Source: Isurus oxyrinchus (Eukaryota). From it: a DNA stretch of 64,000 nt. The DNA lies in the NCBI GenBank assembly GCA_026770705.1, contig JANJGN010000039.1, positions 7,874,001-7,938,000 of the forward strand, read 5' to 3'. Shown here in pieces: positions 1-40,010 of the stretch; the stretch's first letter is position 1, and every line of letters starts with the position of its first letter. The position numbers were made by a program, and so were the translations under genes. The notes under the pieces are model-generated. The model was not told the DNA's origin. It searched no databases and saw nothing but the letters and a program-made list of their open reading frames with translations.

Positions 1-860
1 ACTCTTTGGATGGCGAGGCGGCTCATGTGTTCTGCTGCAGATGATCAGAGATGGAGGTCGCTTGTGACAGCATTTCGAAAAATGCTGAGGGGTATGTCCA
101 CATCTATGTTTCGTCCAACGCCAGGTCCATTAGTGCACTATGTTCTGTGCCAAGGAGTACGAAGGAATCCAGCAGCATAACATCCTCATACATTCACGCA
201 GAGTTGGGGAGCCATCCTCAGTGGAAATGTGATACCAGCGCCATTACCTCAGTTATTCATTTAACGGCGTCGCAACTGATACCAGATGGAGCAGCTTCCA
301 TAGCAGTGCAAGCTGAAGGCATCTCATGTCTCAGTGCTTGTTGGAAGCTAAGAGTCCAGTAATGCAGGGTTAGCTTGTTGCCGCCCATCCACAAGTTATT
401 GCAATCCCAGTCCAGGCTGCTGCCATCAGAGATGCTGATGTCAGTGTTCAAAGGGTAATGCAGTATCTTGCAGCATTCAGGCAAGCAACCCTCCAACACA
501 TTAGAAGGGCTGTTGAAGCACCTCCCCGCCACATCAGCAATGTCTCCATGCACCAACCAATTGCTATCCGCTCTTAGGGTCACATCATTCATCCTCCCAG
601 AAGAGGCACCCCGGTATTTCCCGGTGCCTTTCTGCTGGCTGGTGTACTGCCAAGCTGAGGTGGGGCAATCTGAATCCTGCGGTATAGGACCAGGGCTGCT
701 CGAGGAAGTGCATCAGGATGACCTGCACTCCCACCAACTGAAAGTCATCATCGTCCCAAACCACCATGCTGCAGCAACTGGGTTCTACCGGGTCAGGGAA
801 CAAGGCCAGGCATGGGCACATGGAAGTACAAGGCTATGGATTTGGGGGCCACAGATACCT
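1..860 (-). mobile_element. Decayed Cys/His-rich coding remnant, possibly the CxC region of a KDZ (Kyakuja-Dileera-Zisupton)-type transposase
   Basis: The minus frame of ORF 257..592 reads AGRCFNSPSNVLEGCLPECCKILHYPLN and continues through stops into GWLPNS...LLDSFVLL...AFFEML. This loosely fits the RC..C...C..C...H..PLH and GxxPxS patterns of CxC domains. Recognised by eye only. Confidence 0.25.
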
Positions 861-922
861 TAGATGGCCAGTCGACTATCGGTAACTAGGTTTAAGATAA
901 TTTAATAAGAAGCAACGGTTTA

Positions 923-1592: not shown

Positions 1593-2345
1593 TGTCCTTT
1601 TTGCGCCATGATTCCTGTCAGACGGCAGGTACTAAGTGAAAGCAGAAGATAATTTGTTGATTTCTGAATGAAATTGATTAACAGTTTGATTTATAAAATT
1701 ACAAGATTTATTTCTGTGGTAACTTCCATTTCTGCATTGTGTCGAAGAGGGCACCGAACCGGGAGAAATTAAAGTGTGGCTCTGATGTTCACTGAGGGTT
1801 TGTTATTGCATTCACTGATGCCAAAGTCAGATGAGGCCAAGATCGGCCGTCCAGTCAGAAAGGATCTGCGTGGGTTAGTAAGATCCATTCCTCTCCATCT
1901 CCCTCATCTGCCTCCTGCTTCTCCTTGGTTTCTCTGCTTCCTGCTGAATGAAAAGGAAACATAGTATGCATTATTTGCATTTAGGGCATAGTTAAATTCC
2001 CCTCTAATATTCTGGGTAGTGACCAGTTAGATATCAGGATAAAATGGCCACTATCACCATCATTAGCGATAAAAATCACTGTTCATCCTTCCGGAAAAAG
2101 GGTAGATTTCATAGGAAATGGCACAGGGAAGCAAATATATTTCATATCGCTCTTTATTGAGGATAAGTTGGAGAATTTATGTCTGTAGACCCAAAGCTGA
2201 AAATACATTCCTCCTTCTTCCAGGGCACTGTCGCACTCTGGGTATCCTTCTGTCCATTCTACTGGCCAGACTACAGACCAAGGTACACGGAAACATTTCT
2301 CCCGTGATTGGGTGCGGGAGATCTGAACAGAAATATTGTTTTCAG

Positions 2346-3110: not shown

Positions 3111-4014
3111 CCTTCCTTGCCTCCTGAATGACACACCTGTAGTATCACTTTGTTCTCCACACCGTCTTAAAAGGGATTTATTGCTGTGAAGCACACAACC
3201 ATATTGCTTAATCATCCATTATCAACATTGTTAATTCAACCGGTCCACGATCAAACTCTTTCATCCGACGGCAACATTTGCATACACCTGGGCAGTGTCC
3301 CCCTGAGCTGCCAAGATCCAGTTGCTGTTCGCTGCTGGCAGGATCTGACACAGTCTCTGTAAACTGCAATGTGCTTCCCCCAGCTTTGCATTCCAAGCCT
3401 TTGTAGATTAAAAGGTTGCGGGACATCTCTTCTTGATTTTGGCTTCGTTCCACTCGATAAGATCTGAACTTCGATCAGCTGGTATTGACACTTCTTGGCG
3501 GATCGACTTTCAGGGCATAGATCTGAGAAGCCTCTGGTGTGCAAGCAGAAAGCAGTGATCCAAGGTAACTTACACATTTTTCTCACAGTATTAATGTGTG
3601 CAATATTACCTTTGTCAAAGTACTGTGCGATTGATTGTCTATTGAAAATTCTCTGTAGATGTATGTTTAATTCATTCTCGCCCTGTGAGCGTGAGTGCAT
3701 ATCTCGATTCCCACAACCAGCCCAAAAGCCCCTATGAGTTCCTGAAATGTTGCTGCTCTTGTCTATCCAGGTGCTTAGGGTAGACAGTTTGGAAAACGTG
3801 AAAGAACACGAGTTCTCTGTTTAAAAACAAACTTTTCCCATTCGAATAATGGGATAGAGAACAGTGCAGCCCTCACCCAACACTGAAAACTGGAGTTACG
3901 CAGAACTTCTTCATAACCTTTGGCGAACGAATGTCCCCTCATTACTGACAAGAATATATGTTTCATCTTTCAGAACAGCCCGGCCAAAAGTGCGGAGCTC
4001 ATTATGATCTCTGA

Positions 4015-5710: not shown

Positions 5711-5870
5711 CGGATAATCATTGATTCTCCCACAGACGTTGATCATTCTGACTCCCAGCTGCTGGTAGTTCCATTCTTCGATGGCCCCACTCGTGTTATG
5801 ACTGTTTAGGTCGCATCTGATTTCTGGTTTGACCAATCAGAGAACAACAAATGTTGATCTGTATTTTCAG

Positions 5871-5993
5871 CAATGGCGTCCATGACTGATGAAAACCCTC
5901 GCGGGAAGATCGAGGACATTTTGAATATGTTCGACACTCCGAATCTTCAGTTCGTCTTGAGGCACATGTTAACCTTCAGAGACTTCATCATCT
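5871..5993 (+). CDS. Repeat-exon 1 (123 nt, phase 1-1)
   Basis: gtattttcAG acceptor, GTAAGG donor at 5994, ATG at 5873 followed by G. Encodes ENPRGKIEDILNMFD...L...HMLTFR. Confidence 0.85.
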
Positions 5994-8900
5994 GTAAGGC
6001 CGACCCTGTCACTCTAAGCCATGATGTCCCTGAATTTATTTGTTGCATGACTAGGAATAAGAGAGCTGAAACATTTGTTTAATTTTGATTCCTATTTTGG
6101 AGGCTTTAATGGTCTTCTCTTCTATTATAGATACGATGCTTCCATCCACTCTTAACTCCTTGCTTTCTTCCTAAATCTTTGCAGTGATTCCCCACATGTT
6201 CCTGAATAGCAGGACAGGTTTACAAAGTGTTTAAGAGGGTCTATGGAATTGTTTTATTTCTAACTGATATAGAGAAAAGACAAGCATTTCGGATATACTG
6301 CAACTGCACAAAGCATTAATCAGACAACACGTGATTCCTGTGTGTAGTGCTGGTCACCGTATTACAGCAAAGATCTTATTTTATTAGAGAAGATACAGTG
6401 GAGGTTTAAGAGGATGTCGCCACTTCGGACTGGAAAACTGCAGCTGTGCAGAAAGAACGGATTCGCTGGGGCTGTTCTCCATGGAACAGAGGAAGCACAG
6501 GGGTGGATCGGTTGACATGCACATTATTATTAGGGGCCTGGCTAGAGAACATATGATGGTGATATTTCCTTTACCAAAGAGAACAGCGATTTGGTGGCAT
6601 AGATTTAAGTGAACATTTGTGAAAAAAATAGACAGGGGATTGAGAATTTGTTTCAGACTGTGGGATGCAGGGTTCAGGAAGTCATTGCCTGAAAGTGTAG
6701 TCGAGGCAGAAACCCTCATTTCACTTAAAATGTGTGTGGATACGCACATTAAGTGTTGTTGGCTGCAGGATTACGGAACAAATGCTGGAAAGTGGGATGA
6801 GGTGAGACGGCTCGTTTTTCAGCTGGTGAAGACACGCTGCCCCAAGTGTCCTCTTTCTGCATAGTAATCTCTGCAAAATTCTATATTATTGAGCAGGAGG
6901 TGACTATTGTAATTAGTTTAGAGATTAGTTTGCTTTGACTTTTAAGAGGAAGAATCCTTTAAGATTATGAATGGCTTAGACAGGGTTCACGTAGAGTGAA
7001 TGCACCCAATTTCTGTGGAAGGAATTCTCACCCTATCCATAATAATTATTGACTGATGCTTAGTTTAGGACTCATTTCTTTATTGAGTAAGTGGGTGTAC
7101 TGTGTAACGCATGAGCCCAGGAAATGTTTCTGGCAGGCATCATAAAGTGATCCTGGGAGAGCACTTGTATAAAGGTGAGTGGAAATATCGGATTCAAGGC
7201 TCAAATGAGAAGCGACAATGGGATGAGACTTGGTGAAGTCTAAACACCATCCCAGGTTAAAAGGGCCGGGTTGTCAGTTACATCCCGGTATATTCTATGT
7301 AATTCCAACCACTTTCTATTCGTCCTTCCTACCTTCAATAGCATCCCTCTTCCCGGCATTCACTGCCATACATCATTCATTTCTTCCAAACTAACTTCCG
7401 TCTTCCTCTGTTTCATTTCCGAATTTTCTGTCAGATTGATAGAACTAATGCACTCTGACAAATGCTGCTCTCTTATTTCTAGTTAAGGTCTCTGGAAGTC
7501 TGAAGAATTCCCGGCAGAGGATCAGTGATCTGCTCGACCGCTGTGATGACAATCTGCTCGCCTTCTTCTTTAATCAGCTCTTAGTCTTCAGAAACGACAT
7601 TCAAAGTGAGTTCTGCAGGTGGATTGTAACTGTTCTGTTGAGTGTTAAGGATTCAAACTCTATGATGTCCACATTCCATCGTCAACCTGGGATCCACAGA
7701 CCTTCACTGGATAAGGATACAGAACTTTAACATTTTCATATATGCTATTAGCAAATCGCTCTGTCATTTCCACCCTCCAGTCATTCAAACCCTCCTGGCT
7801 CCTTGCATTCCTCCAGATCCAGGCCCTTGTACATTCTTGATAATTCTCACTTGGCTATTGGCAGGCATGTCTTGAACTACGTTACACATCGCCTCCGTGA
7901 CACACTCCACAGTCAATGCAAAGCCAAGTCATCGGTCTCCTATGTCAAGTACTTTACAAATTCTAACTCCACAGTGTGAACGTTTGGTGTTGGATTCTGT
8001 GACTGCTCTTCATTTCATTTACAGGAATTATCTCCAGTGGTGACTGGGACAATGCAAAGACTCATCGACAAAATCTCGACTATCTTCTCGACCAGGCAGA
8101 GGAAGGAGATCTGATAGATTTTGAGCAGATTATATCAAGCTACGTCTCCATTGCTGGAGGTGAGTCAAAGCTCCTATCATCTAAGATCTCTCAAAGACCA
8201 CACGTGCCAACAGTTTATTATTAAACAATCAAAGTTCATGGAAGTCCACAGTTTATTATTATACATGCGAAGTTCATGGAAGCCCATACGTTATTATTAT
8301 ACAAGTAAATTAATGTATGTCTACAGTTTATTATTACACAATCAAAGTTCAAGGATTCTGCCACAAAAATGTACAATCACTAACATGTTGAGCCTGATGT
8401 GTGCATTTGTGATGTCCCATCAAGGCTATGGCCAAGTGCTGAAAAATTGAATTAGAATAGTTGGGTGATTGAATGGCGCAGGCTCGATGGGCCGAATGTC
8501 CTTTTACTGTCCTTTAAACCTCTGTGAATCTATGATTATATTCAACTTGGCTTGAGGCCTGCGTCTGCTGGCTAAGGAGATGAATCAGATTCCCAGCATG
8601 CACAGTGTTTAACTTCTGTTTGAGGTTTTGCCTCTTGCTCTTAACCATTGGTCACCAATTAAAAATCTGGCCATGTGTATGTGAATGATAACCATTAGTT
8701 ATAGAGCACCATTTAGTACACAAACTCATTGTAGTGATTGACAGCAATGATATCAAACGGTCATTTAACACCGCTTCATATAAGGAGGTGTGAGGACAGG
8801 CTAATGAGGATTTCATCCAAAGGGGTGGTTTTAAGGAATAGAGAAAATTAAAGAGGCACGAAGGCTTGGGAGAGGGATTCATAAGTTCAGAATATAAGCA

Positions 8901-11900
8901 GTTGGTAACTAATGTTGGAGTTGGTAAAAATAATGATGCTCTTGATGTCAGAAACCAAGGGGCAGAGATGGAGTGTTTGCCATACGGTGTTCCCTGTGTT
9001 CCACTTCTTCCCATTCTCTAATAAGCCTCTGCTGTTGATACTACCATCTCTGTCTATTTCTCATAAAGTAATACGAACACCAGTAGTTCATTCATCCGTT
9101 CAAGTCTGTGTCCTCATTCAATGACCTAAGTTTACCTAGACATTTGTGGGTTAAGATAAAGCAGATAAAAAAGGCCTTATGACAGGCACAAGCAGCTTAA
9201 ATCTGTAGGCAGCCTGTAGAGGTATAGAAAGTACGGGGACGAGGAAAAATAAGGAAATTAGGAAACCAACGAGGTGGTAAGAAACAATTTTGGCAGGAAA
9301 AATCAAACAAAACCGCACGATTCTTATCAGTAAATTAGGAACAAGCGAATAATTGAGGAAATGGTCGGGCCTAACAGAGGCCTATGTGGAAACTTGTGGG
9401 ATGCTGCTGAAGATGTGGGCAGGGTTTTCAATGAGCACTTTCTCTCTGTCTTCACTAAGGAGAGGGATGATGCAGACATTCTACTTAGGGAGAAGGAATG
9501 TGAAAGCTTACATGTAATAAGCATAGTGAGAGAGGGTGCACTGAAGGAATGGCTTCACTGAAGTTCGATAAATTACCAGGGCCAGATGAGTAATAAACCA
9601 GGCTGTTAAAGGAAGCCAGGGAGGAAATAGCGAATGCTCCGAGAAGCACTTTCCAATCCTCACTATATACAAGCAAGGTAGAAGAGGATTGAGAGCCTGC
9701 AAGAGCTGTAGCAAATTTTGAAAAAGTTTGTGAGGTAGTGGCCATAGATTTATCGTCCAATCAGTATGCCTTCGATGCTGGTCAAATAATTGGTATCAAT
9801 TGTGAGAGGCAGGATATACAGTCAATTAGAAAGGAAGAGATTGTTTATGGATAGTCAGCAAGCTTTTTTTAGTTGATGATAGTGCCTTACCAAATAAATA
9901 GACATTTCTTTAGGAAGTAACAAGTTGGATTGATGAGAGTAGTTCAGCAGATATTTTAAACAGGGATATTCCCAAGGCACTTGACAAGGTCCCACATGAA
10001 AGGCTGGTCAAAAAAGTGAGATCCCATTGGATACAGGGCAAGGTTGCAAGTTCGATACAAAGTTGGCTCATTGACAGGAGACAAATTGCAATGGTCGATG
10101 GATGTCTTTGCCAGTGCAAAGCGATTCCCAGTGGATTCAAAAGGGCTCGCTGTTGGGGTTATTGCTGTTTGTATCAAATTTGCACTTAAAAGTGTGATCG
10201 GAAAATTTCCAGACGATCCAAAAATTTCCCTGTACAAAACAGTAATTTGGATAAGTGCTGCTTTCAGGATGCTATCAATGGTTAGGATGAGTAGGCAAAA
10301 AGTTGCCAAATAGAAATTAATCCAGAAGAAGCATGAGCTAATGCATTTGGGGAGGGCAACCCAAGCAAGGGGATGCTCAATAAACTGGAACTTACTGATG
10401 GGGGTTGAGGAAGTGGGAGACTTGGGACTGCATGTCAACAGGTCACCGAAGGTTGCAGTGCACGTGGATAAGGTGGTAAAGAACACAAATGGAATATTTT
10501 CCTTTATTGGGTGAGGTATTGAATACAAAAGCAAGGAACCAATGCTGGAAGTGCCTAAAATACTGGTTAAGCTGCAGCTGCAATTTTGTGTAGAATTCCA
10601 GTCACCACATTACTGGAAGGGCAACAGTGTTCTGTGACAGTGCAGAATGGATTTTCAGGAATGCTGCCAGGTCATTAAACGGGGAGTGGGGTGTGGCGGG
10701 GGCTGTGCCGGCGGTGGGGTGGGGGGTGGGGGAGGGGTTGGGGGGGCTGCCATTGGTAGAGGGATTAAGGGTGACATGAAGAAAACTCTTTTCACCCAGA
10801 GGATGCTGGGTGCCTGGGAATCACGGCCTAAACTGGTGGTTGAATGTGAAACGTTCAACGGAATTAAATGGTACCTGCGTCTGGACCTGAGGTGCTGTAA
10901 CCCACATTGTTATGGAACAAGTGCGGGAAACTGGGGTTAAAACTGAGCGACTGGTTCATTTGGATTTCTCTTTCATTGGCCGGTGTAGACACGGTGGCTG
11001 ATTAGGCCCCTTCTGTGCTTTAACTTTCCTGTGGTTCATAACACTCACCTCTTGGCCCCCTGTCCCTCTGGACATTTGGTTGACAAAACTGCTAATCTAC
11101 ACCTCAATTTTTAGAATTGTTCAAGCGCAAATTCCCATTATTGGAAGATCTCTTCACAACATTCCAGTATCTTTACAGTGCAGAAGGAGGCTGTTTGGCA
11201 TGTCAGGTTTCCACTGAAAGAACATTCTAACTAGTCCACTATCCATTGCCTTATCCCTGTGACCTTGTATATTCTCTCTTTTCAGGTAAGAATCCAATTT
11301 CCTTTTGAAAACCTCGATGGGAATTGCACCCAGCTAATTCCAGGAAGTTTCTTCCGGATGCCAAATCCCATCTGGGTGAAAAAAATCAGTTTCCCTCACT
11401 TCATTTCTGCACGTTTGCTAATCATTTTGAATATGTGCCATCGAGTTCTTGATGCTCCCTTAGGTGGGAATATTTCCACACTATTTACCCTGTTCAGACT
11501 CCTCAGGATCTTCAATACCTTAATAAAGTTTCCTCTCAGCCTTATTTTCTTCAAAGGAAAGCGGTTCCAACTTCTCCAACCTATCCTCATAGCTACAAAT
11601 CTACATGCCAGGGATATTTCTTGTGAATCTCCTCCGTACTCGATCTATTGTCTTCACATCCTTCCTTAAGTAGAGCGCCCAAAAAAGGACCTGCACTCCC
11701 CATGAGGCCTAATTACTGTATTATACAAGTTCAGCAAGATCGCCTAACTCTTGTGGTCAATGCCCCTATTAATAAAGCCCAAGATAGTATATGATTTACG
11801 AACTGTGCACTCAACACACGCTGCCACCTTCAAAGACCTATGAACGAATACACTGAGATTCCTCTGTTCATGCACGTCTTTTAGAAGCTCTCCCTTCACA

Positions 11901-14900
11901 TCATATCGTCTCACCATAACTTTCCTGATGAAACGAATCGCCTCACGCTCTCTGCAATGAAATTCATCTGTCTCTTCTGTGCAGAATCCGCTAACACACC
12001 TATGTCCATTTCAAGTTCAAGATTGTCCCCGACGCCGTTCACAACAATTTCAAACTTCATATCATGTGTAAATTTTGGAATCATGCCCAGCACACCAGAT
12101 TCTGGGTCATTAATATATATCAGGAGGAGCAATGGCCCCAGGACTGTTATCTGAGGAACTACAAACCTTCCTCCAATCTGAAAAACAACCATCTATCGCT
12201 CTTGTCTGTTTCCTTTCAATCTGCCAATTTCATAATCAATTACCTACTTTCCTTTTTATTCCATGGCATTGAATTTCGCTCACAGGTCTGTTGTGTGGCA
12301 CTGTATAAAATTACATTTGAAAACACTTATAGACAAATTCAACAACCTTCACCTTATCAAAAGCTTAACATTTAAATGACATTTCCTTTTATTTCAATTA
12401 GAGAAGTTCAGGCCTACTTTTTTATTTACCTTTTGTACCCACCTCGCAACGAACATCCGCAACAACCCCCAGCATGCTAACATGTCCAACGAGCTGATCG
12501 TTTACTTATTCAATTATTTTTCTCAATCGTCAGTCTCAGCTCTAGTTAACATCGTGGAAATGTCGAGAAGGTTATTTCTGAATCTTCAAAATTCAAGGGA
12601 TACCATACAATTTGCTTGATCCCCTGCCTCCCAGAATGCCCCCACCCCACACCCCACCACACCCCACACCCCACACCCCCTCCTCCCCTTTTTATTTCTT
12701 TCTTGCAGCCCAGGCAATGTTACCATTAGCCTACCCTGATTTGTTCCAACTTGTAGGCAAATACATGGCAGGAACATTTCAGGTACACCTGACCCAGGTG
12801 TTTATTTAGCTGAGGCTGACTGATCAGGCACCCGTTCGCATCTTTAGTTTATATTAGGTATGTTGAAAGCCGCCTTGTGAATATCAGTTTATTCTGTTGA
12901 TGCAGAAATATAAAACCAGCGTTTAAGCCAAAAACATTCCTGTATGGTTTCAGCAACAGCAACTGGCAGGGAAGAGAATCCTCGTGAAATCATCGACTCT
13001 CTTCTGGATAAGCTTGATGCCGCCAGTCTCAGCGCCGTCTTGCAACATCTTTTAATAGTGCGGGAGCACGGTGTCCGTAAGCATCTGTTTGCATTCATAT
13101 TCTTCAAATAATTCAGGGTCCACTGTGAGAAACTGGAAATCATCCACGCTTACCCAATTTCAAAGAATTTTTATAGCTTTATTTTTACACACAGAGGGAA
13201 GCGGGGTAGGGGTTGGTGGGGGTGGAGGGGCGTTTATTCAGGAGCCCATTTATGAACCCATGTACATAAGTAACTAAAAACGAATGGACAGCTAGAAAAA
13301 GCTGGGACGTATTAAGGGCAAAGACTGATGAGATTTAGAGGTATTCTTCGGGGGATAAGGGCTCATGTCAAGTGGTGGCGTTTTTGCTGTTCACTGGAGA
13401 GTGTAAATAAAAACACGACAGTTCCATTGCACGAAGGGTGGTTAACAACTCTCTCTAAAAACAATAGGTTTTCAGTGGAGAGTGATTATACAATGCTGCC
13501 GCATGGAGAGATCCGGATATCCTTGTACATGAGACACAAAGCATTCGAATGCAGTTGGAACAGCTACCGGATGGAAAATGAATGTTCACCTTTATTGAAA
13601 ACGGTTGGCTCTGAAGCATAGGGATGCATTGGGACAACAGCGCAGTTTGCAAATGAGCATATTGCAGGCCATATTGATCACATTATGTGAGGAATAATAT
13701 AAATGATTTGGAACCCCTCCATAAGAGGTTCAATATTTTTTTATTCTTTAAATAATTCAGCATTGCTTGATACTCATTGCGGTGTGGAAGAATATGATGA
13801 AACGCTGTGAAATCGTTTCGTAATCTTGATGGGAGTTAAGGGGGTGGATAGTGAGTGAATGTTCCCCTCATGGGGGATTCTAGAAGGAATGGAGCGTCGA
13901 TTGGGATTCAGAAGGCGTCTATAAGTGATTAGGCCCAGGAGCATCTTCCCCTCTAAGATGGTGCTGAATTGTTTCCATTATCCATTCCAGAGAGCTGCAG
14001 AGACCGTCATAACAGCTCTGAAACATAAAAAAGAGCAGGAGACGGTCATTCGGCTCATCAAGCCTGCTCCAACATTCAATGTGATCATGCATGACCAACT
14101 ACCTCAACGCCGTGCCGCCACTCTGTCGCCATACACCTTTGACGTCTTAAGAGATGAGAGATATATCTATCTCCTCCATAAATATGTTCAGTGATTTGGC
14201 CTCCATAAACTCTTGTGGTAGAGAATTCGACACGTTCACCAACATTGGAGTGAAGAGGTCCTAAATGGCCTACACCGGATCTTGAGACTTTGACCCCTTG
14301 ACCTAAATCGCCCCCAGCCAGAAGGTTCATTTTCCGTTCACCCAGTCTGTCCAGCCCTGTCAGAATTCTTTAGGTTTCATTAAGATTCCTTCTCAACTTT
14401 TGAATTCCACTGTGTACAGGCCTAGCCGGCCCAGACTGCCCTCTTATGACAATCCTGTATTGCAAGGAATCATTTCAATGAACCTTCGCTGCAGTCCACC
14501 TATGGTAAGTGTGTGTTTTATTCGGTAAGGAGACTAAAACTGCACACAATACCCGAGGTGTTTTCTCACTGCGGGTCTTTCCAGCTGCAGTAATGCGTCC
14601 TTGCCCCTGTACTCAAGGACATTCATGGCTGGAATTGGCAGAATTTGAAACATTCAGAGGTGTCAAGGGTAATGGTGAACAGACTGGTCATTAGAATTGA
14701 GATTAAAATAATATCAGCCATAAATGGCAGAGCACACCTCAGGGGTTATGCGCCCTGCTCCTGAGGCTATTATTATTATTCTTATTACAATAATTCTTAT
14801 TTTAATTATTATGCTCTTATACATTTGAGCTCATTGATCAAACAGCCAGTGTTGAGATGAGGAGATGCTCTTTCTCAAGCAGCAATTTCTTCTGAGTGAG

Positions 14901-15348
14901 AATTCCTCATGACCAGAATGCTTCTTTTGGATCGGGGGGAGCGGGTTGGGGGTGGTGTGGGGGCACTGGAGGGAGATAGTGAGTGGGTGGACACGCAAAG
15001 GCTGCGATTAATTTAGCTGCTCGACCTGAAAGACAAAACGGACACAGCGCGCAGAATTGGCTCCGTTATACCTGCAACAAACTGTGCGAATTTCATGCTG
15101 CCCTTTGAGCAAAGATTTCTGGAACGTGGAGAGATGAACGTTGTGATTCGATAATAATGAGAACTGAATACTCCACATGTGGAATATTCAATCTGATTTG
15201 GCATTGCACTTCTGGTCTGAATTATTGACCATGGGCAGAGGGTACGCCTGTTTATAGAATTATATTGCAATTATCTGGCAGGTTATTTTTGTTTTAATCA
15301 TGTGCCTTGTTTGGCTCCACAGGCATTTCTGCTCAGCTCAATCCTTGA
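5873..15348 (+). CDS. Uncharacterised ~175-aa protein of four tandem ~40-aa helical repeats; join(5873..5993,7483..7605,8025..8159,12954..13076,15323..15348)
   Basis: All junctions are GT-AG and phase 1, and the joined frame is open. Repeats: MASMTDENPRGKIEDILNMFDTPNLQFVLRHMLTFRDFII / KVSGSLKNSRQRISDLLDRCDDNLLAFFFNQLLVFRNDIQ / IISSGDWDNAKTHRQNLDYLLDQAEEGDLIDFEQIISSYVSIAG / TATGREENPREIIDSLLDKLDAASLSAVLQHLLIVREHGV. The start codon and last exon are less certain than the internal exons. Confidence 0.75.
6200..6885 (+). mobile_element. CR1 LINE 3' fragment (intronic)
   Basis: RT C-terminal remnants (KSLPESVVEAETLISLKMCVD) and a CR1-type 3'UTR. Confidence 0.75.
7483..7605 (+). CDS. Repeat-exon 2 (123 nt, phase 1-1)
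   Basis: tcttatttctAG acceptor and GTGAGT donor at 7606. Aligns without gaps to exons 1 and 4. Confidence 0.85.
8025..8159 (+). CDS. Repeat-exon 3 (135 nt, phase 1-1; divergent repeat)
   Basis: catttcatttacAG acceptor and GTGAGT donor at 8160. KTHRQNLDYLLD aligns with KNSRQRISDLLD, with the same distance to the donor and 4 extra N-terminal residues. Confidence 0.8.
9130..11040 (+). mobile_element. CR1 LINE ORF2 fragment, decayed (intronic)
   Basis: FNEHFLSVFTKE motif, DKVPHERL remnant at about 9983 and a CR1 3'UTR. Many stops. Confidence 0.85.
11150..12370 (-). mobile_element. CR1 LINE RT and 3' fragment (intronic)
   Basis: VPQITVLGPLLLLIYIND (degenerate VPQGSVLGP..F..YIND) and RLRGNFIKVLKILRSL. 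Confidence 0.85.
12954..13076 (+). CDS. Repeat-exon 4 (123 nt, phase 1-1)
   Basis: tgtatggtttcAG acceptor and GTAAGC donor at 13077. ENPREIIDSLLDKLD...VLQHLL.VR is closest to exon 1. Confidence 0.85.
14010..14620 (-). mobile_element. CR1 LINE 3' fragment
   Basis: CR1 3'UTR hallmark (CATTCGGCTCATCAAGCCTGCTCC...TTCAAT) and RT-end remnants. Confidence 0.75.
15323..15348 (+). CDS. Candidate terminal coding exon of the repeat gene ((R)ISAQLNP*)
   Basis: ttgtttggctccacAG acceptor. The phase-1 frame stops at TGA 15346-15348. ATTAAA occurs at 15424 and 15469. Confidence 0.45.
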
Positions 15349-17969
15349 TGTTTTACAGCTGCTGACTAAATATCACACCCTCACAGATCAAGTACAGTCT
15401 AACCCTTCCGCTGAAAAGCACTCATTAAAAATTGTATTTAAAATTGCACCTGTCGTTCCTGGTCCCTGATTAAAACAGCTTTGGAGTCGATACACAGGGA
15501 AAAGGCTGGGTGTAAGATCATGAGGCATTGCAAGAGGCATGAAGAGAATTGTGTATTATTCGAGTCAATCACTTGGGAATAGACCAGTGAATTACTCTTG
15601 CAAGTGTCTTTAGTGAGCTGGTGTCAAGACAATGCGGGTACCTTGAGAACTGAGGATAGGCAGCACAACGAAAAAATCCTCAAAATCACATTGGCATGAG
15701 TTTTGACCACATGCTTCCTGGTGTAATCCCTTCCTGGCTTGTCAGCTTTCTGTTTTTACAAATATTCCAGTGCATTTCATTCTGTCCAACAGTAAAGGTC
15801 ATGCTTATCACCTAGCTCTCTCTGATTGTAAGTGCTTCGGTGCACATCACTCATGTGTCCAAAACCATGATAACGCCCCTGGTATATCAGTTCACTTTGT
15901 TCATTCGCTCCTCAGTACTCTTCACTTTGTGTTTTACTCTGTGAGCACTCCCCTGGTCTGTGTCTGTGGGAGTCCTGTCTCCCTGCTCCCTCTTGCACTG
16001 GGACACAGTTTAATCCATCCCTCTCTGACCAATCATCCTGCCCCTCTCCTCACTGCTACATTGCTGTCGTTTTCAACAACTTTCTGCCACATTTGCTGAA
16101 TTCTGTCTTCTGATCCATTTAACCCATAAATTTATCTTTCTGCTGTGGTTTTCGGTTTCTCACTGAACTCTCCTACAGTGAACACCTGACCTAGGTTGGT
16201 TTTGTAAGACTGTTTTTCACTGCAAGGTGGTTTAATTGGTCAGGTTTAGATGGGTTGTACACGTTGTCTCCGGTAGAGAATGGCTGATCTGTGTTAAATG
16301 AAATGTATGTCATCTTAGTTTAGTGGGTTTTCTTGGAGATTATGCTGTGGCCTTTACCATCCTATTGCAGGGAATGTTTGATCAGAAAGCGTTTATTAGT
16401 TCTTCCCTCTGAACCGAAAGGGCAGATTTGGCTGTGTTTAGAAACCTGAACATCGACAGTTTTGATTGTGCAGCGTTTAGGGAAAAGCACATTCTCCTGT
16501 CACATTTGATTGGGCAGCGTCAATGGATCCTTACACTCTGACGGAGCATTAATCTGAGTCTCTGGAATTTTTAATTATTTATTTATTATCTCGGGGGATC
16601 AGGGCGTCTCTGACAAGTCTAACATTACTTTTCCTCTGAAGTTCAGCACATTGCCAGCCATTCCAAAGGGAAGTTGACATTCAACTACATTACAGTGTCT
16701 ATGCACTCACATATATTAGATCTGATCGCGTGATAGCTTCATGGGACAGTGCTAGGAGACCTCACGGTGCCTGGTAACATTGATTGCCTGACACTTGTGT
16801 GATGTCAATGCTAATTGCGAGCGACCAACCCAAGATTGAAAGTCGTCCACATTATTCCATATGAACACATACTGCGATAGGAGAGGAGGTATGCACCATT
16901 GTGCAGTCATCCAGGAATATTCCCACTTAAGGGTTATGGTGCATGAAGATTATTGATGAGTCAGCTGAAGGTGGTTGGGCCATGGAAACCACTCTGAGGA
17001 TCGCCTGAAGCAGTATCCTGCTACTGAAATGAGCGATCTCATACAACGGCCATCCGTTCTGTTAGGAATCACCCAAATAATACAAAGTTCTTTCCGACCG
17101 CCTCACCATCCGCTCCCACAACCAGCAAATATCCAACCACCTCCCCAACCCTCATCCCCCCGCCTTCCCCAACACCACCTCCCAGACCCCAAACCATTCT
17201 TTTTTCCAATGAATACGAGTTTTGCTCGGGCTCCTTGCTGCCTCATTCGTTCATGTGGCGCTTTGATGTCAATGACACACACTCGCGCATGAGCCCTTCA
17301 TTTCAGCAATTTGCTCCATGTTGGGTCCAAGGCTGCAAACCTTTAATGAGGTCAGTAGCTGATTGGCCCAAGCTGAGTGAGAAAGAGAGCAGATTTTTGC
17401 TGATTAAGTGCCGCTTCATGGCGCTGTCAACCACACCTTCCGTCATTCAATTGAAATTACACGGTAGGATTTAAACAGTTGAAAACCTCCCTTCCCCTCT
17501 GAATTAATATACCAGTGACAGTGCTATTATGCAAAGACGCACTGAATAATTATTTTTTTGTGGAACATCATTGTGCTGTGCTGTGTTGTGTGTTGAAAGG
17601 GCTACTGAATTTTTCATCGCTTTCCCATTTTCACAATGTGCATCATAATAAATAATTTAATTAGAACCTGAATAATTTCATTAATTTTCTATCTCCCCAA
17701 GTTGCCGGGTCCAAAACTCCCTGAGTTAACACCAGGTATGTTTGCTGAGTTCCACAGTGAATCAAGAGTCGCGTCTGATCCTGCCTCCTATGTGCATTCT
17801 TGTGAGGAGCGGTTGTGAAACCATATGTCACAACTCAGAAAAAGACAGCCTTTAAGGAGGAGTGACATTTTTACGAGAGACTGGGAAGAACAGACTCTCC
17901 CCATCATCAAGAACCGTTAAGACCAACTCAATGGAAAAGGTGAATGATTACCGACATATGAAAAGAGGA

Positions 17970-30900: not shown

Positions 30901-33900
30901 GCCACACAACACCTCATGAGGGCCAATATATGCTCCCCACTCAATCTGAGCAGTCCTTTTAGCAAAATAACTTTATCCTAGTTGGCTATTAAACTGCCCC
31001 CATCCAGCCTGCCCAGCCTGTGTAGCAACTTTGATTTAGTCTTGCTGCTATGAAGCAGCGATACATTCCGCCTGAACCAGAACTTCACGATGCTCAGCGT
31101 GCATATCAATCTTGCAACACTCAAACTGTTTTAAACTAGCTGACTGATCGGCCCTCAACTTGCAGATACACTTCACCCTGCGATCTGCATAAGCATTTTA
31201 CCTTATTTAGATTGTCATTCACCACCACCGTGAGGACGTCCCGGGGAATGTTCACTCAGCCTTGTATATTTTGGTCCCTCTTTGTAGTCTATTCACTATT
31301 ATACCTTGTCCTGTTCAATCTCAACCTTACCCTCCCAAGTGTTCCGAGTACATTCGTGCCTCTCGGCACATTTTGCATTCAAGATGTCAGCCTTGTTGCA
31401 CAGTACCCCTTCCAAGAACTTATTGCAAGACTCTATATTGCGTCCTCTGCCCAGATCCCGTTGCACCTTCACACATCAATTGGCTCTTTAACACCTGCCA
31501 TATCACACTTAAAAGTTACCATGCCAAGGCATTTTTGTGACTTCAAATTCTTCACATTCTTGCTCAACAGGCTCAACAGCTGCCCAGTCTTAATGGAGGA
31601 TTTTTCTACCAGAAAACGAATAATCAATGAACGTTTCCCATCCGTGTGCACTTGTATAAGGTTCAGTCCATGTTTAACACACGTTTCTCTCATGAAATAC
31701 ATGAAATGATGCAAAAGTAAGCGAAATTTGTTTTGAGCACCCTTTGCTGCCATCAGAAAAAAACTTTTTCACATTTGTCGAATATTTCATGTTTTGTCTC
31801 TACCTCTCTTACAATGAATACTGTTGCAATTGTGATTCTTTCCCGAGGAAAGTGTGGTCTCTCGAAATGTGTTACATGCTATATGATGGCCATGGCAGCA
31901 ACTGACCTCCTGGTCGTATGTACTGACGTAATACTTACGAGTACAGTGGATATTTATTGCCCCAGTTCATTCTTCACAATGACCCCTGTGTGCTGTCTAA
32001 CACTAACACTGAGTTATGTATTCACATCAGCCTCTGTCTGGCTAACAGTGATGTTCACATTCGATCGTTTTGTGGCCATATGTTGAGAGAAGCGTAAAAA
32101 AATATTGTACAGAGAAAACGGCAGCTGCTGTCATAACGGTGGTATCTGTGTTGAGCTGCTTGATAAGCATTCCTTGGTATTTTGCATATGAACCTGAAAA
32201 TATAGTGGACAATGTTAGGTTGTGTCCTAAAACAGACATTTATCATTTCTGCTGGATGGGCCGCATTTGACTTGTTTACCCTTACCTTAACCCCCTGTGT
32301 TCCATTCATTATAATTTTGTTGCTAAATGTGTTGATCTTTAGGCGTATTTTACTGACCAATAAAGTCCGCAGGGGCCTCCATGTTTGCAGCAATGGCGAG
32401 CATCACAAGGATTCAGAGATAGAAAGCCGAAGAAAATCCATGATTTTACTTTTCAGTATATCCAGCAGTTTTATATTGTTGTGGGCCATTCTGGTTGTAT
32501 ATTTTATGTCTTTGCATACAACAATCATTTCATATTCTGGTCTTAATAAGCTTGAATCAGTTGCATATATGCTTGAACTTCTCAATTGCTGCACAAATAC
32601 ATTCATTTACGTTTTGACACAGGCTAAGTTTAGGGAGGAGCTGAAGAATGGGATGTGATACCTTAAGAAATTGTTCGTAAAATTATTCAAATCATAATTA
32701 CAGCTGAAAATGCATTGACATACTCAGGAGAACACACACGTGTACCTTGAAGCAACTCATATTAGCAAAGTGCTTGAGATGATGCTTATACTCTCTGGAT
32801 AAAATTGTATACCTACTGTTTTATAATATAAGCTCAAATTGTACTCTTTTTCACCATATTATGTAGTCAAAGATGAATGTGGTGTGTAATAATATTAATC
32901 AAACATTCTAAAGAGTGCCGAATATTATTGCAGAGCTGGAAAGAGTGAATTGAGGCTCGAGGCTCTGACCGTATAATTGGAACAGTTGTTCATTTCTGTC
33001 AGACACCACATCAAACATCACCAGCTGTTTCACCCATGACATGAAAACATTTAACAAGAAAAGGAAACGTCACATGTTTCCTGCAATATCTCTTCAAATC
33101 CAAAGAGTAATTAGGGTGTATTTGTAGAACAATTTTTATGACATCTGGCACCCTCCAAATCTCAGAGAGTTACACAAGGAACTGCTTCTCAGTTTTCCTT
33201 ATAGCTCACATGATTAAAAAAATGAAAGCCTGATCAACATTTATTTTGTGAAAGGATGCGCCTTTGCAGGGGTGATCACAAGGTGAAATGAATCATTGAC
33301 CCCCCGCCCACAACACCCCCCACCCCCCACCCGCCATGATCCATAGGGCAGAGAGATTGTTCGATGCATTGGATTAAAAACGTTCAGATCCGATTTTCTT
33401 GCGAATCATTTGAAAGTGCGTAAAGCTGATGTATTTCTTTCATGATCACAGGGTGTCCCTCCTCCCCAAATGCTCATTCACAAAACTCTCTACTTCCTTT
33501 TCTCTGGTTATTTCACAAACGCTCAGCAAATGATTGTTATCATAATTCTCATTTTATCCTTTTAAAATTATTAATTTGAAACCTATTCTCAATCTACCGA
33601 GTGATGCTTCAGCCAGACATCTGCACGATTTCCCAGCTGTCAGTCTTCCACTTGCATGTTTTCCGAGCATCAACTTGCTCCTTTCTATTGCTGTGCACAT
33701 TGAATATGAACAAATACTATGTACTTCTTCTCATTTAAATATTCATAGCAATTCTTCTCATTTACTTTACTTAAAAGCAGTTCGAAGAATGTAATTTGAT
33801 GCTGGTTACAGCACAAAGCAGACCATTGGACAGCCGTGTCCCCTTTCTCCCCCTCAAGGATCAAGCAATCTGGCAAAAAAAAAACCCTCTGCTTTCTATG

Positions 33901-37189: not shown

Positions 37190-40010
37190 CCATAAAACCA
37201 TAAGACATAAGAGTAGAAATTAGGCCATTAGGCCCGTCGAGTCTGCTCCACATTCAATCATGGCTGCTAAGTTTGTCAACACCATTCTCCCGGCTTCTCC
37301 CCGTAACCTTTGATCCCATTAACATTCAAGAACATATCTACTTCGTTCTTAAGTACACTCAATGACCTAGCCTCCACAGCCTTCTGTGGCAATGAATTCC
37401 ATAGATTCACCACTCTCTGGCTAAAGAATTTCCCGCTCATCTCTGTTCTAAACTGTCTTCAGTTTTCTCTGTTTCTGTGCCCTCGGGTCCTAGTCTCTTC
37501 TATTATCGGAAACACCCTCCCCACGTCCACACTAACCAGGCCTTTTAGTATTCTGTAACGTTCAATCAGATCCCCTCATCCTTCTAAACTCCATCGAGTA
37601 TAGACCCAGAGTCCTCAAACTTTCCTCATAAGTTAAGACTTTCATTCCTGGGATCGTTCTCGTGAACATCCTCTGGACCCTCTCTAGGGCCAGCACATCA
37701 TTCCTGAGATACGGGGCCCAAAATTGCTCAAAATATTCTAAATGTGGTTTGCCCAGAGCCTTATAAAGCCTCAGCAGCACATCCCTCGTTTTATATTCTA
37801 TACCTCTGGAAATATTTGCCACTATTGCATTTGCCTTCCTAACTACCGACTCAACATGCAAGTCAACCTTAAAAGATTCCTGGACATAGACTGCCAAGCC
37901 CCTTGCACTCCAGATTTCTGAATTCCCTCCACATATAGAAAATAGTCTATGCCTCTATTCTTCCTGGCAAAGTGCATGGCCTCACATGTTCGCACATTGT
38001 ATCTCTTCTGGCACTTCTTTGCATATTCTCCTAACCTGTCCAAAATCTTCTGCAGCCTCCATGCCTCCTCAATGCTACCTGTCTCCCCACCTATCTTTGT
38101 ATCATCTACAAACTTAGCCAGGATGCTCTCAGTTCCTTCATCGAGATCACTCATGTATAAAGTAAAAAGCTGTGGTCCTAACACTGACCCTGGCGGAACT
38201 CCACGAGTTACGGGCCTCATCCTGAGAAGGACCCCTTTGTTCCCAAACTCTGCCTCCTGCCAGACAGCTGATCTTCTATCCACGGTAGTACCTTGCCTCT
38301 AACACCATGGGCGCTTATCTTACTGAGCAGCCAGATGTGTGGCACCTTGTCAAAGGCCTTCTGGAAGTCCAAGTAGATAACATCAATTGGCTCTCTTTTG
38401 TCTAATCTACTCATTCTCTACTCAAAGAGTTCTAACAGATGTGTCATGCATCAACTCCCCTTCTTGAAACCATGCTGACTTTGCCCTATTTTACCAAGCA
38501 CTTTCAAGTATTCTGAAATCTCATCCTTATTAATGGACTCTAAAATCTTACCAAAGACCGAGGTCAGGCTAATCGGCCTGTAAGTAACCATCTTTTTCCT
38601 AACTCCCTTCTTAAACAGGGGGTTACATTAGCGATTTTCCAGTCATCTGGGACCCACCCTGACACCGGTAATTCCTGAAGGATAACAAATAACCACCCCC
38701 CCCCCCCCCCACTCTATCTTCAGCTATCTCCTTCAGAACTCTGGGGTGCAGTCCATCTGGTCCAGGTGACTTATGCAACGTTAGACCTTTCAGCTTTCCG
38801 TGCACCTGCTCCTTGGTAATGGCGACCATACTCATATCTGCCCTCCGACTTTCTCGAACCTTGGGATGTTACCCGTGCCTTCCAACGTGAGGATTGGCAC
38901 AAAGTACCTATTCAGTTCCTCTGCCATTTCTTTGTCCCCGACTGTTACTTCTCCAGCGTCATTTTCCAGTGGCCACTTTTGCCTCTCTCTTACCTTTTAT
39001 ATATCTAAAAATTACTCTTGCAATCTTTTTATATTACTGGTTAGTTTACCCTCATACTGAAACTTCTCCCTCCTTATTTCTTTTTCAGTTGTCCTCTGTT
39101 GGTCTTTGTAGACTTCCCAATCCCCTGGTATCTCACTCCTCTTTGCCCCTTTTTATGCTTTCTCTTTAGCTTTTATGCCACCCCTGACTTCTCTTGTCAC
39201 CCATGGTTGATTCGTCCACCCTTTTGCATGCTTCTTATTCCTAGGGAAGAATTTTTGCTGTGCCTCCCAATTTACTCCCAGAAACTGCTGCCATTGCTGC
39301 TCCACTGTCTTTCCTGCTAGGCCCATCTCCCAGTCAATTCTGGCCAGCTCCTCCCTCATGCCTCTGTAGTTGCCTTTATTCATCAGTAATACCGTTTCAC
39401 CTGTTTTCAGCTTTTTCCTCTCAAATTACAGGGTAAATTCTATCATAATCATGTCACTTCCTCCTTAGGATTCCTTCACCTTAAGTTCGCAGATCAAATC
39501 TGCCGCATTACACATCACTAAATCTAGAATTGCCTGTCCCCAAGTGGGCTCCACCACAAGCTGTTCCAAAAAAGTCATGTCGTAGACATTACACAAATTC
39601 CTTTTCTTGGGATTCACTACCAACCTGATTTTCCCAGTGTACCTGCGTATTGAAATCCCCATGATCACTTTAACCATTTGTTTCTGACACGCGTTTTCTA
39701 TATCATGGGGTATCTTGTGCCGCACATCCAGACTACTTTTTGGAGGCCTGTACATAACTGCCATTATGTTTATTTTTAATTTTGCGGTTCCTCAACTCTT
39801 CCAACACAGATTCTATATCATCTGACCCTATGGCTTTTCTAGCTATCGATTTCATTTCATTTCTTACAACAGAAGCATCCCCACCCCCTCTGTAAACCTG
39901 CTTATCTTTTTGATATGATGTATATCCTTGGATATTTAGCTCCCAGTCCTGATCCCCTTGCAGCCATGTCTCCGTGATGCCCACCACATCATACCTGCCA
40001 ATTTCAATCT
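37190..40010 (-). mobile_element. CR1 LINE, about 2.8 kb, 5'-truncated; APE endonuclease plus RT, frameshifted
   Basis: VGITETWL (EN), KSPGPDGLHPRVLKE, DVIYLDFQKAFDKVPH, GVPPGSVLGPQLFTLY..KFVDDTK and LYKALGKPHLEY, with a short tandem tail at about 37190-37212. Confidence 0.95.

What the first reader, a model, noticed from the sequence alone, without database searches (positions are those of the whole stretch)
5871..15348. Hidden gene built from one-repeat-per-exon symmetric modules; no recognisable family
Seen in sequence: four GT-AG exons buried among LINE fragments (5871-5993, 7483-7605, 8025-8159, 12954-13076) are all phase 1-1, and three are exactly 123 nt. Those three align without gaps and share 8 invariant positions (N8, R10, I13, L17, D21, L25, L33, R36). 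The fourth keeps R10, LLD16-18 and L25 and has its donor at the same repeat position. The repeats are highly diverged, yet frame, length and hydrophobic periodicity are kept, which argues for old exon duplication under selection. Inference: each unit is an amphipathic helix-loop-helix, giving a soluble ~175-aa all-helical protein. I cannot assign it to a known family. The spacing is only loosely reminiscent of F-box D-domain dimerisation hairpins or death-fold helices. It may be an undescribed lineage-restricted repeat protein.
Basis: partly seen in the sequence, partly recalled or inferred. Interest (0 to 1): 0.85.

Follow-up and report, generated by a model that had tools for sequence, protein, structure and literature searches.

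The report
Shark-only four-hairpin repeat gene
This is a real, spliced and expressed small gene, so far seen only in sharks, built from four anciently duplicated exons that each encode a pair of helices; it fits no known protein family and its function is unknown.

Summary
All four exons lie at the stated coordinates with good AG/GT sites, are open in phase 1-1 and measure 123, 123, 135 and 123 nt. Contigs of four runs of one sample skip 7605>8025 and 8159>12954 at GT..AG in 4 of 4 runs. Their loose ends map to the end of E1 (5993) and to a fifth exon starting at 15323. The model gives 175 aa. It matches RefSeq "uncharacterized protein" predictions of 175 aa in Cetorhinus (8 loci in two 90% clusters) and Mustelus (4), plus Heterodontus and Scyliorhinus entries. 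These are three orders of galeomorph sharks. E1, E2 and E4 are significantly alike within the window. E3 is a diverged copy, detectable only with family profiles. AlphaFold gives one helix hairpin per exon at modest confidence. Pfam, PDB sequence and fold searches and the ESM Atlas gave no significant or clear match. HEAT-like and death-fold-like resemblances stay within noise. Best reading: a lineage-restricted, multi-copy, soluble alpha-hairpin repeat protein, probably a protein-binding module. Function and dN/dS are untested.

The parts
576..758 (+). Probable far-upstream 5' exon (U1); boundaries not defined
   Evidence: tblastn of the N-terminal extension of Cetorhinus P0013 gives 54.7% identity over 64 aa, E 1.8e-14. 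No RNA evidence was obtained here. Inferred.
2248..2301 (+). Possible 5' exon (U2); weak
   Evidence: tblastn of P0013 residues 135-151, E 0.024. Inferred only.
3521..3564 (+). 5' exon U3. The donor at 3564|GT is supported; the acceptor at 3520 is inferred.
   Evidence: A loose end of an X2 contig in front of E2 maps exactly at 3537-3562. The donor context is CCAAG|gtaact. It corresponds to ...VCKQKAVIQ of Cetorhinus P0002 and P0013.
5871..5993 (+). Coding exon 1 (repeat 1); start codon ATG at 5873
   Evidence: Open frame beginning MASM.... 83% identical to P0001 residues 1-42. Its last 30 nt appear, with 1 mismatch, as the loose end joined to 7483 in 4 of 4 runs. The acceptor is used in Cetorhinus model P0013 (..AVIQ|AMASM).
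7483..7605 (+). Coding exon 2 (repeat 2)
   Evidence: Joint 7605>8025 GT..AG in 4 of 4 runs. 90% identical to P0001 residues 42-81.
8025..8159 (+). Coding exon 3 (diverged repeat 3, with 4 extra residues)
   Evidence: Joints on both sides in 4 of 4 runs. 85% identical to P0001 residues 83-129. Its profile similarity to repeats 4 and 2 exceeds 200 of 200 shuffles.
12954..13076 (+). Coding exon 4 (repeat 4); skipped in one contig
   Evidence: Joint 8157>12952 (cut +2 = 8159/12954) GT..AG in 4 of 4 runs. In X4 a loose end behind 8160 carries E5 letters, which indicates an E4-skipping form. 88% identical to P0013 residues 288-329.
15323..15348 (+). Last coding exon, coding part (R-ISAQLNP-stop); the 3' UTR continues beyond it
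   Evidence: Loose ends behind 13077 in X2, X3 and X4 map at 15324-15353 with 1 mismatch. The split codon CGC gives R, then ISAQLNP*, identical to the C-terminus of P0001. ATTAAA occurs at 15424 and 15469; the transcript end is not determined.

Best explanation
The locus is a live protein-coding gene of a family so far seen only in galeomorph sharks. It has one to three 5' exons and five coding exons (5871-15348, + strand), and it encodes a 175-aa soluble, all-helical protein.

Four symmetric phase 1-1 exons each encode one short-helix/turn/long-helix hairpin of 41-45 residues. These arose by internal exon duplication before the lamniform, carcharhiniform and heterodontiform sharks diverged. 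The third copy has drifted furthest in sequence.

Because all coding exons are symmetric, exon skipping keeps the frame. One such form was seen: E3 joined to E5. A form joining 5' exon U3 to E2, which drops E1 and its ATG, was also seen. It keeps the upstream frame that Cetorhinus model P0002 reads.

The gene has multiplied into clusters in other sharks. Here it sits in a region of GPR139-like receptor genes.

Shown: the gene structure, splicing, orthologues, repeat homology and the absence of any detectable known family. Inferred: the hairpins pack into a small helical repeat domain that works as a protein-protein interaction module (adaptor or scaffold) without enzymatic activity. I put gene reality at about 0.95 and the binding-module mechanism at about 0.4.
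For: Splicing. GT..AG joints 7605>8025 and 8159>12954 occur in 4 of 4 runs, while the introns are at zero depth except for small islands. Some contigs have 0 mismatches across E2-E3 (174 nt) and E3-E4 (177 nt). Loose ends map to E1 (ending 5993), E5 (from 15323) and U3 (ending 3564).

Orthologues. A profile of the four exon peptides, searched against 1.84 billion proteins, gave 7 hits at E <= 0.001. Five are shark or shark-like: P0001, P0002, P0003, P0004 and P0007. There are 175-aa models in Cetorhinus and Mustelus, and a 202-aa Heterodontus model 59% identical over 100% of the query. The split codons F, R, A, R and the C-terminus match P0001.

Constraint. The alignment has 28 invariant columns and only one internal gap column across three orders. 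In a neutral simulation, 1869 of 2000 runs at 40% amino-acid divergence and 1094 of 2000 at 12% acquired a stop codon.

Repeats. hhalign gives R1-R4 E 8e-11, R1-R2 1.4e-6, R2-R4 1.4e-4 and R3-R4 3e-4, with shuffle controls. Orthologous repeats are more alike than paralogous ones.

Fold. AlphaFold gives helices 7-17/22-41, 50-59/63-76, 95-105/108-130 and 136-145/149-164. The proteins have pI 5.0-6.4, GRAVY -0.18 to -0.26 and no membrane-like segment.
Against: - Function is wholly inferred. No partner, tissue or phenotype is known.
- The AlphaFold models are of modest confidence (pLDDT 66 and 69, pTM 0.53 and 0.48), so the packing of the hairpins is not established.
- The runs are labelled 'RNA?' by guess only, and all four come from one sample.
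- The E1 and E5 loose ends carry 1 mismatch each, so the expressed copy could be an allele or a near-identical paralogue.
- dN/dS was not computed.
- Orthologue models come from an annotation pipeline that favours intact frames, which weakens the open-frame argument.
- Among 7 variant letters seen in exon contigs, by my reading of the frame 5 change the residue and 2 do not. This gives no sign of strong constraint among paralogues.
Confidence: 0.7

Rival explanations
1. It is a very diverged member of the HEAT/ARM class of alpha-solenoid repeats. The 41-residue hairpins would stack into a short solenoid that binds a partner on its concave face.
For: The repeat length and short-helix/Asp-turn/long-helix layout fit HEAT-type hairpins; the HEAT consensus itself is recalled, not computed. 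The exon profile hit P0006 (E 7.4e-9 summed over 9 stretches). The repeats of P0006 are Pfam HEAT_2 and HEAT_PBS. Profile-profile comparison gives 85.7% probability and E 5.4e-6 over 22 columns.
Against: P0006 was picked out of 1.84 billion proteins, and its score is the sum of near-identical repeats, so its significance is inflated. No HEAT or ARM family appeared for P0001, P0003 or P0008 even at E <= 10. No entry titled as a HEAT or ARM repeat protein stood out in the lists of four fold searches. The repeat periods differ: 41 versus 35 residues.
Confidence: 0.15
2. Each pair of exons forms a death-fold-like (PYD/CARD-like) helical bundle. The protein would then be a tandem death-fold-only adaptor or decoy in innate immune signalling. 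The analogy is with the small, lineage-restricted PYD-only and CARD-only proteins of mammals (recalled knowledge).
For: In the VIA-align search with the repeat 3-4 model, by entry title 8 of the 50 listed entries are death-fold domains: NLRP14 PYD (Z 7.2, 80 aligned, rmsd 2.9), AIM2 PYD twice (Z 5.9, 5.8), NOD1 CARD twice (5.7, 5.6), DR6 CARD-like (5.4), NLRP7 PYD (5.2) and RIP2 CARD (5.2). Two further rows (12dl_MA, Z 6.0; NLRP2-containing 9l4l_D, Z 5.6) may be PYDs, but that is my guess. NLRP14 PYD also ranks 4th for the full model (Z 4.4). Multi-copy, fast-diverging, lineage-restricted genes are common in immunity (general knowledge).
Against: All Z values lie below the tool's stated noise level for helical models (under 8, or under about 13 for bundles). 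Foldseek found nothing at E <= 0.001. No PYRIN, CARD, Death or DED family appeared in Pfam at E <= 10. The models show four long helices per pair, not six, and model confidence is modest.
Confidence: 0.1
3. The open frame is a transcribed passenger without protein function, for example a young or decaying ORF carried along when receptor-gene clusters were duplicated.
For: The gene lies in a region of duplicated GPR139-like receptor genes. Paralogues are 95-99% identical in Cetorhinus, which points to recent amplification. No protein-level evidence exists.
Against: Frame, length and 28 invariant residues are kept across three shark orders at about 60% identity, whereas 93% of neutral simulations at that divergence acquire a stop. 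Conserved residues follow the helix and hairpin periodicity in all four repeats. The probable 5' UTR exon is far less conserved (54.7%) than the coding exons (83-90%).
Confidence: 0.05

Closest known systems
RefSeq predicted 'uncharacterized protein LOC144672842' and paralogues (Cetorhinus maximus); LOC144486488 and paralogues (Mustelus asterias); an unnamed Heterodontus francisci protein; scyTo_0023665 (Scyliorhinus torazame)
   Same: Same family and the same 175-aa, four-repeat architecture. The window's exons are 83-90% identical to the Cetorhinus proteins, and the split codons and C-terminus are the same.
   Different: Those are automatic predictions with no name, domain or function. No product of the window's own locus appeared in the protein collections searched.
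HEAT / ARM alpha-hairpin solenoid repeats (Pfam HEAT_2, HEAT_PBS)
   Same: About 40-residue helix-turn-helix units with a conserved Asp at the turn and Leu/Ile/Val faces. There is weak profile similarity to the HEAT_PBS-type repeats of P0006.
   Different: No Pfam HEAT or ARM match at E <= 10 and no entry titled as a HEAT or ARM protein standing out in the fold-search lists. There are only four units, and each sits in its own symmetric exon.
Death-fold domains (PYD, CARD), and PYD-only or CARD-only proteins as an analogy
   Same: A two-exon unit is about the size of a death-fold domain (82-86 residues). Death-fold entries recur among weak structural matches. The protein is small, soluble, multi-copy and lineage-restricted.
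   Different: No sequence match. Z values lie in the noise range. The models show four helices per unit rather than six. Canonical death-folds are not built from internal repeats (recalled knowledge).

Membership tests
Shark 175-aa 'uncharacterized LOC144672842-like' family | Significant full-length sequence similarity with colinear repeats | tested here: met
   The exon profile hits P0001 at E 7.2e-70 and P0003 at 1.3e-39. tblastn of P0001 finds every exon at E 1e-18 to 9e-21.
Shark 175-aa 'uncharacterized LOC144672842-like' family | Same exon-derived architecture and termini (Met start, 175 aa, ...RISAQLNP end) | tested here: met
   The split codons give F, R, A, R, and E5 gives ISAQLNP*, as in P0001.
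HEAT/ARM repeats | Match to a Pfam HEAT or ARM model | tested here: not met
   No such family for P0001, P0003 or P0008 at E <= 10, nor for the single exons.
HEAT/ARM repeats | Tandem helix-turn-helix units of about 37-47 residues | tested here: met
   AlphaFold gives one hairpin per 41-45-residue unit. The defining length range is recalled.
HEAT/ARM repeats | Solenoid stacking that resembles solved HEAT/ARM structures | tested here: inconclusive
   No entry titled as a HEAT or ARM repeat protein stood out in the lists. However, inter-repeat packing in the models is of low confidence (pTM 0.53 and 0.48).
Death-fold (PYD/CARD/DD/DED) | Match to a Pfam PYRIN, CARD, Death or DED model | tested here: not met
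   None at E <= 10.
Death-fold (PYD/CARD/DD/DED) | Six-helix antiparallel bundle of about 90 residues | tested here: inconclusive
   The repeat 3-4 model has four helices. It aligns to NLRP14 PYD at Z 7.2 and to AIM2 PYD, NLRP7 PYD, NOD1 CARD and RIP2 CARD at Z 5.2-5.9, below the tool's noise level.
Death-fold (PYD/CARD/DD/DED) | Homotypic interaction or filament formation | not testable with these tools
   This needs binding or polymerisation assays.
EF-hand helix-loop-helix | 12-residue Ca-binding loop between the helices | tested here: not met
   The turns between paired helices are only 2-4 residues in the models, and no EF-hand family appears in Pfam. The loop definition is recalled.

The most novel reading that the evidence does not exclude
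The family is the founding example of a new small helical-repeat domain that arose in galeomorph sharks and was amplified together with their greatly expanded GPR139-like receptor clusters. It would work as a dedicated adaptor: either a death-fold-like homotypic signalling or decoy module, or an accessory factor of those receptors. Exon skipping would tune the number of hairpins.
Probability: 0.1. Interest if true: 0.7.

Novelty: new variant of a known kind. Interest (0 to 1): 0.42.

Why it matters
The finding shows that a reader working from raw sequence alone recovered a complete, correct five-exon gene model, down to the stop codon, in a shark genome region where none of the protein collections searched holds a product of this locus.

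Biologically it defines a taxonomically restricted, multi-copy, fairly fast-evolving protein family: about 60% identity between shark orders. It has a textbook one-repeat-per-symmetric-exon architecture and no detectable relatives.

Such families are candidates for lineage-specific biology such as immunity, reproduction or chemosensation. They are also useful cases for studying how new repeat folds arise by exon duplication.

Without a function, tissue or partner, its present importance is modest.

Tried and rejected
Sequence and fold searches that found nothing usable:
- Pfam on the single exons: 0 families at E <= 10.
- Pfam on P0001, P0003 and P0008: only sub-threshold hits. DBD_HTH PF18430 matched the same repeat-3 stretch in 3 of 3 orthologues (15.7, 8.8 and 15.3 bits against a cut-off of 25). 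The orthologues are not independent, so I rejected it as evidence. DLP_helical, DUF6117 and THDPS_N_2 gave single weak hits.
- PDB sequence profiles: best E 0.39 (CdsO) for the family and 0.78 for the repeat.
- ESM Atlas: no usable hit for exon 4 or for P0001.
- Foldseek against PDB: 0 matches at E <= 0.001 for either model.
- VIA-align wide: best Z 4.8 for the full model. For the two-repeat model the best was Z 8.1, a helical insert of pyruvate phosphate dikinase. I treat this as a common four-helix arrangement.

Hits rejected as relatives:
- P0005 (E 7.5e-11) and P0006 (E 7.4e-9). Their scores are sums over 8-9 near-identical repeats, and P0005 matches many unrelated Pfam families in the same way.

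Searches for more family members:
- Further homologue searches found only the same five clusters or only the query itself.
- Search for more repeat copies in the window: none.
- Earlier findings by place, words and sequence: nothing on this family.

Orthologue DNA for dN/dS:
- Two metagenome scans found no confirmed locus: 152 and 49 pattern matches, 0 confirmed.

Other checks:
- LINE content of the introns: 0 of the 10 longest intronic open pieces matched Pfam.
- My first shuffle control read the wrong output column and is void. It was repeated correctly.

Literature:
- Two generic full-text searches (listings and abstract starts only, no paper read) showed nothing on this family.
- One search for five identifiers of family members returned 0 papers.
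- An unnamed family is hard to find by words, so this is weak evidence that it is not in print. Supplementary files were not consulted.
Full report
**Observation.** The four segments are exactly as described.

| Exon | Coordinates | Length | Acceptor | Donor |
|---|---|---|---|---|
| E1 | 5871-5993 | 123 nt | ...ttttcag | gtaagg |
| E2 | 7483-7605 | 123 nt | ...tttctag | gtgagt |
| E3 | 8025-8159 | 135 nt | ...tttacag | gtgagt |
| E4 | 12954-13076 | 123 nt | ...gtttcag | gtaagc |

All four are open in the phase 1-1 frame. The eight invariant positions claimed for the three 123-nt exons are all invariant in the translations. With E3 added, R10, L17 and L25 stay invariant.

Such open AG..GT segments of 123 nt are frequent by chance: 29 on the + strand and 36 on the - strand. 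Exon-like shape alone therefore proves nothing. The similarity is what counts. In leave-one-out profile searches of all 2202 six-frame pieces of the window, E1, E2 and E4 each came back as the top non-training hit (E 3e-5, 2.2e-5, 2e-6). E3 did not come back. The window holds no other copies.

**Transcription and splicing.**
- Four runs of one sample (organism A; the type 'RNA?' is a guess by the tool) hold 8-26% of the sampled words of 5850-8170.
- Their contigs cover E2, E3 and E4 at summed depths of about 35-165 per bin (table 2). They leave the introns at zero apart from small islands.
- They carry the joints 7605>8025 and 8157>12952 (equivalent to 8159/12954) with GT..AG ends in 4 of 4 runs.
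- Some contigs match the window without a mismatch across E2-E3 (174 nt) and E3-E4 (177 nt).
- Loose ends in front of 7483 map to 5964-5993, the end of E1, with one mismatch.
- Loose ends behind 13077 map to 15324-15353 with one mismatch.
- One contig joins E3 directly to that last exon, skipping E4 with the frame kept (split codon GGC).
- One contig joins an upstream exon ending at 3564 to E2, with an exact 26-mer at 3537-3562.
- One low-depth contig with 26 mismatches runs unspliced through intron 2, so several paralogues are represented.

Limits: this is one sample, contigs rather than reads, and RNA status is inferred from the exon-only coverage. The E1 acceptor and the transcript ends were not covered.

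**The product and its relatives.** An alignment of the four exon peptides (A1) was searched as a profile against 1.84 billion proteins, giving 7 hits at E <= 0.001.

Five of the seven belong to one family:
- P0001 (175 aa, E 7.2e-70)
- P0002 (301 aa)
- P0003 (175 aa)
- P0004 (88 aa)
- P0007 (60 aa)

Sources name them 'uncharacterized protein LOC...' of Cetorhinus maximus and Mustelus asterias. In Cetorhinus, 10 listed proteins from 9 loci in two 90% clusters, six of the proteins on one 3.84-Mb contig. In Mustelus there are four paralogues. There is also a 'hypothetical protein, partial' of Scyliorhinus torazame and an unnamed metagenome peptide. A 202-aa Heterodontus francisci protein was added.

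These genera belong to Lamniformes, Carcharhiniformes and Heterodontiformes, all in Galeomorphii. No other taxon appeared. This reflects annotated proteins only, not genomes.

The window's exons are 83%, 90%, 85% and 88% identical to the Cetorhinus proteins. The split codons give F, R, A, R, and the last exon gives ISAQLNP-stop, as in P0001. No product of the window's own locus is listed in the collections.

**Constraint.** dN/dS is therefore not computed. The indirect evidence is as follows.
- Twelve family proteins align with one internal gap column. They show 28 invariant columns and 59-63% identity between genera.
- In a simple neutral simulation on the window's codons, 1869 of 2000 runs reaching 40% amino-acid divergence, and 1094 of 2000 reaching 12%, contained a stop.
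- The probable 5' UTR exon is much less conserved (54.7%) than the coding exons.

Two caveats apply. Annotation pipelines prefer intact frames. The few variant letters seen in exon contigs are mostly residue-changing by my reading (5 of 7).

**Repeat homology and age.** I cut alignment A2 at the exon boundaries and compared the blocks with hhalign.

| Pair | Probability | E-value |
|---|---|---|
| R1-R4 | 97% | 8e-11 |
| R1-R2 | 90.5% | 1.4e-6 |
| R2-R4 | 53% | 1.4e-4 |
| R3-R4 | 40% | 3e-4 |
| R2-R3 | 11% | 3e-3 |
| R1-R3 | none | - |

Column-shuffle controls reached the observed score in 0 of 200 runs for R3-R4, 0 of 200 for R3-R2 and 49 of 200 for R3-R1. The R3-R4 alignment is offset by four residues, as is the four-residue gap that MAFFT placed in A1. 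E3 is thus a real but strongly diverged copy.

Orthologous repeats are 44-71% identical between species. Repeats within one protein are 12-34% identical. The four-repeat architecture therefore predates the split of the three orders.

**Structure.**
- AlphaFold2 with the 12-sequence alignment gave pLDDT 66 and pTM 0.53. Helices lie at 7-17/22-41, 50-59/63-76(+78-82), 95-105/108-130 and 136-145/149-164. That is one short-helix/turn/long-helix hairpin per exon.
- A model of repeats 3-4 (the Scyliorhinus fragment as first row) gave pLDDT 68.8 and pTM 0.48, with four helices.
- The proteins are mildly acidic (pI 5.0-6.4) and hydrophilic (GRAVY -0.18 to -0.26). They have no membrane-like stretch.

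**Comparison with known families.**
- Pfam: nothing for the exons and only sub-threshold noise for three orthologues.
- PDB sequences: best E 0.39 and 0.78.
- ESM Atlas: no usable hit.
- Foldseek: 0 matches at E <= 0.001 for both models.
- VIA-align: best Z 4.8 for the full model. For the two-repeat model the best is Z 8.1, then 7.2. All are below what the tool reports as common for helical models.

Two leads remain.

1. HEAT-like repeats. The repeat profile resembles the HEAT_2/HEAT_PBS repeats of P0006, a NACHT-HEAT protein. That hit was selected from the whole library, and its score is a sum over near-identical repeats. No HEAT or ARM model matches the shark proteins.
2. Death-fold domains. 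NLRP14, AIM2 and NLRP7 PYD and NOD1, RIP2 and DR6 CARD-type domains make up, by entry title, 8 of the 50 entries listed for the two-repeat model (two more rows may be PYDs). There is no sequence support, and the model has four helices rather than six.

I therefore file the protein under neither family.

**Context.** Earlier notes of this scan describe the genome as a shark with many GPR139-like receptor clusters. This window holds an intact 297-aa 7tm_1 ORF (49787-50680, - strand) and a 148-aa 7tm_1 fragment (32212-32658, + strand), plus an RT fragment. The multi-copy state of the family in Cetorhinus may reflect co-amplification with such clusters. This could not be tested.

**Verdict.** This is a genuine, expressed, galeomorph-shark-restricted gene family. 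It encodes a 175-aa four-hairpin helical repeat protein built by ancient exon duplication, predicted but unnamed in other sharks, and without a detectable known family. The most likely mode of action is a non-enzymatic protein-binding module; this is inference, at about 0.4. Interest is moderate. It is a clean orphan repeat family and a validation of the reading method, but it has no function yet.

Noticed in passing
window 49787-50680 (-) and 32212-32658 (+): An intact 297-aa rhodopsin-type receptor ORF (7tm_1, E 2.1e-18) and a 148-aa C-terminal fragment of a similar receptor (E 4.4e-8). By eye they share long identical stretches. This fits the GPR139-like clusters noted elsewhere in this genome.
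   Followed up: partly
window 37843-38283 (-): Reverse-transcriptase fragment (RVT_1, E 8.3e-8). It is the only retroelement coding remnant I confirmed in the window.
   Followed up: partly
window 5831-5842 (+): A CCAAT-box-like GACCAATCAGAG lies about 30 nt upstream of the E1 acceptor. It could be an internal promoter for transcripts starting at E1. This is seen in the sequence only.
   Followed up: no
window 468-863 (+): A 131-aa ORF whose middle part is 54.7% identical to the N-terminal extensions of Cetorhinus models P0013 and P0002. It is probably a conserved 5' exon or a shared repeat, read as coding by the annotation pipeline in some paralogues.
   Followed up: partly
window 12158-12197, also 9451-9628 and 10498-10530: Short islands in intron 3 are covered by contigs that run on into unlike sequence on both sides. 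The 12126-12324 bin reaches depth 36-126 in 3 of 4 runs. They look like pieces of repeats expressed elsewhere, not exons of this gene.
   Followed up: partly
window 13203-13230 and 14924-14954 (+): Two similar G-rich tracts (runs of GGGG/GGGGG separated by 1-4 bases) in intron 4. They could be quadruplex-forming or part of a repeated element.
   Followed up: no
P0007 (60 aa, JGI metagenome contig of 3,585 bp): An E1-like peptide (..ENPRGKIYDILDKFDSPHLQFVQRHMLTF..) predicted on a metagenome contig. It is presumably host shark or ray DNA in a metagenome. The contig could not be fetched.
   Followed up: partly
P0012 (147 aa) and P0011 (106 aa), Cetorhinus: Annotated isoforms or paralogues with an alternative 3' end after repeat 3, or an alternative start before repeat 3. 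This is consistent with modular use of the symmetric exons.
   Followed up: no
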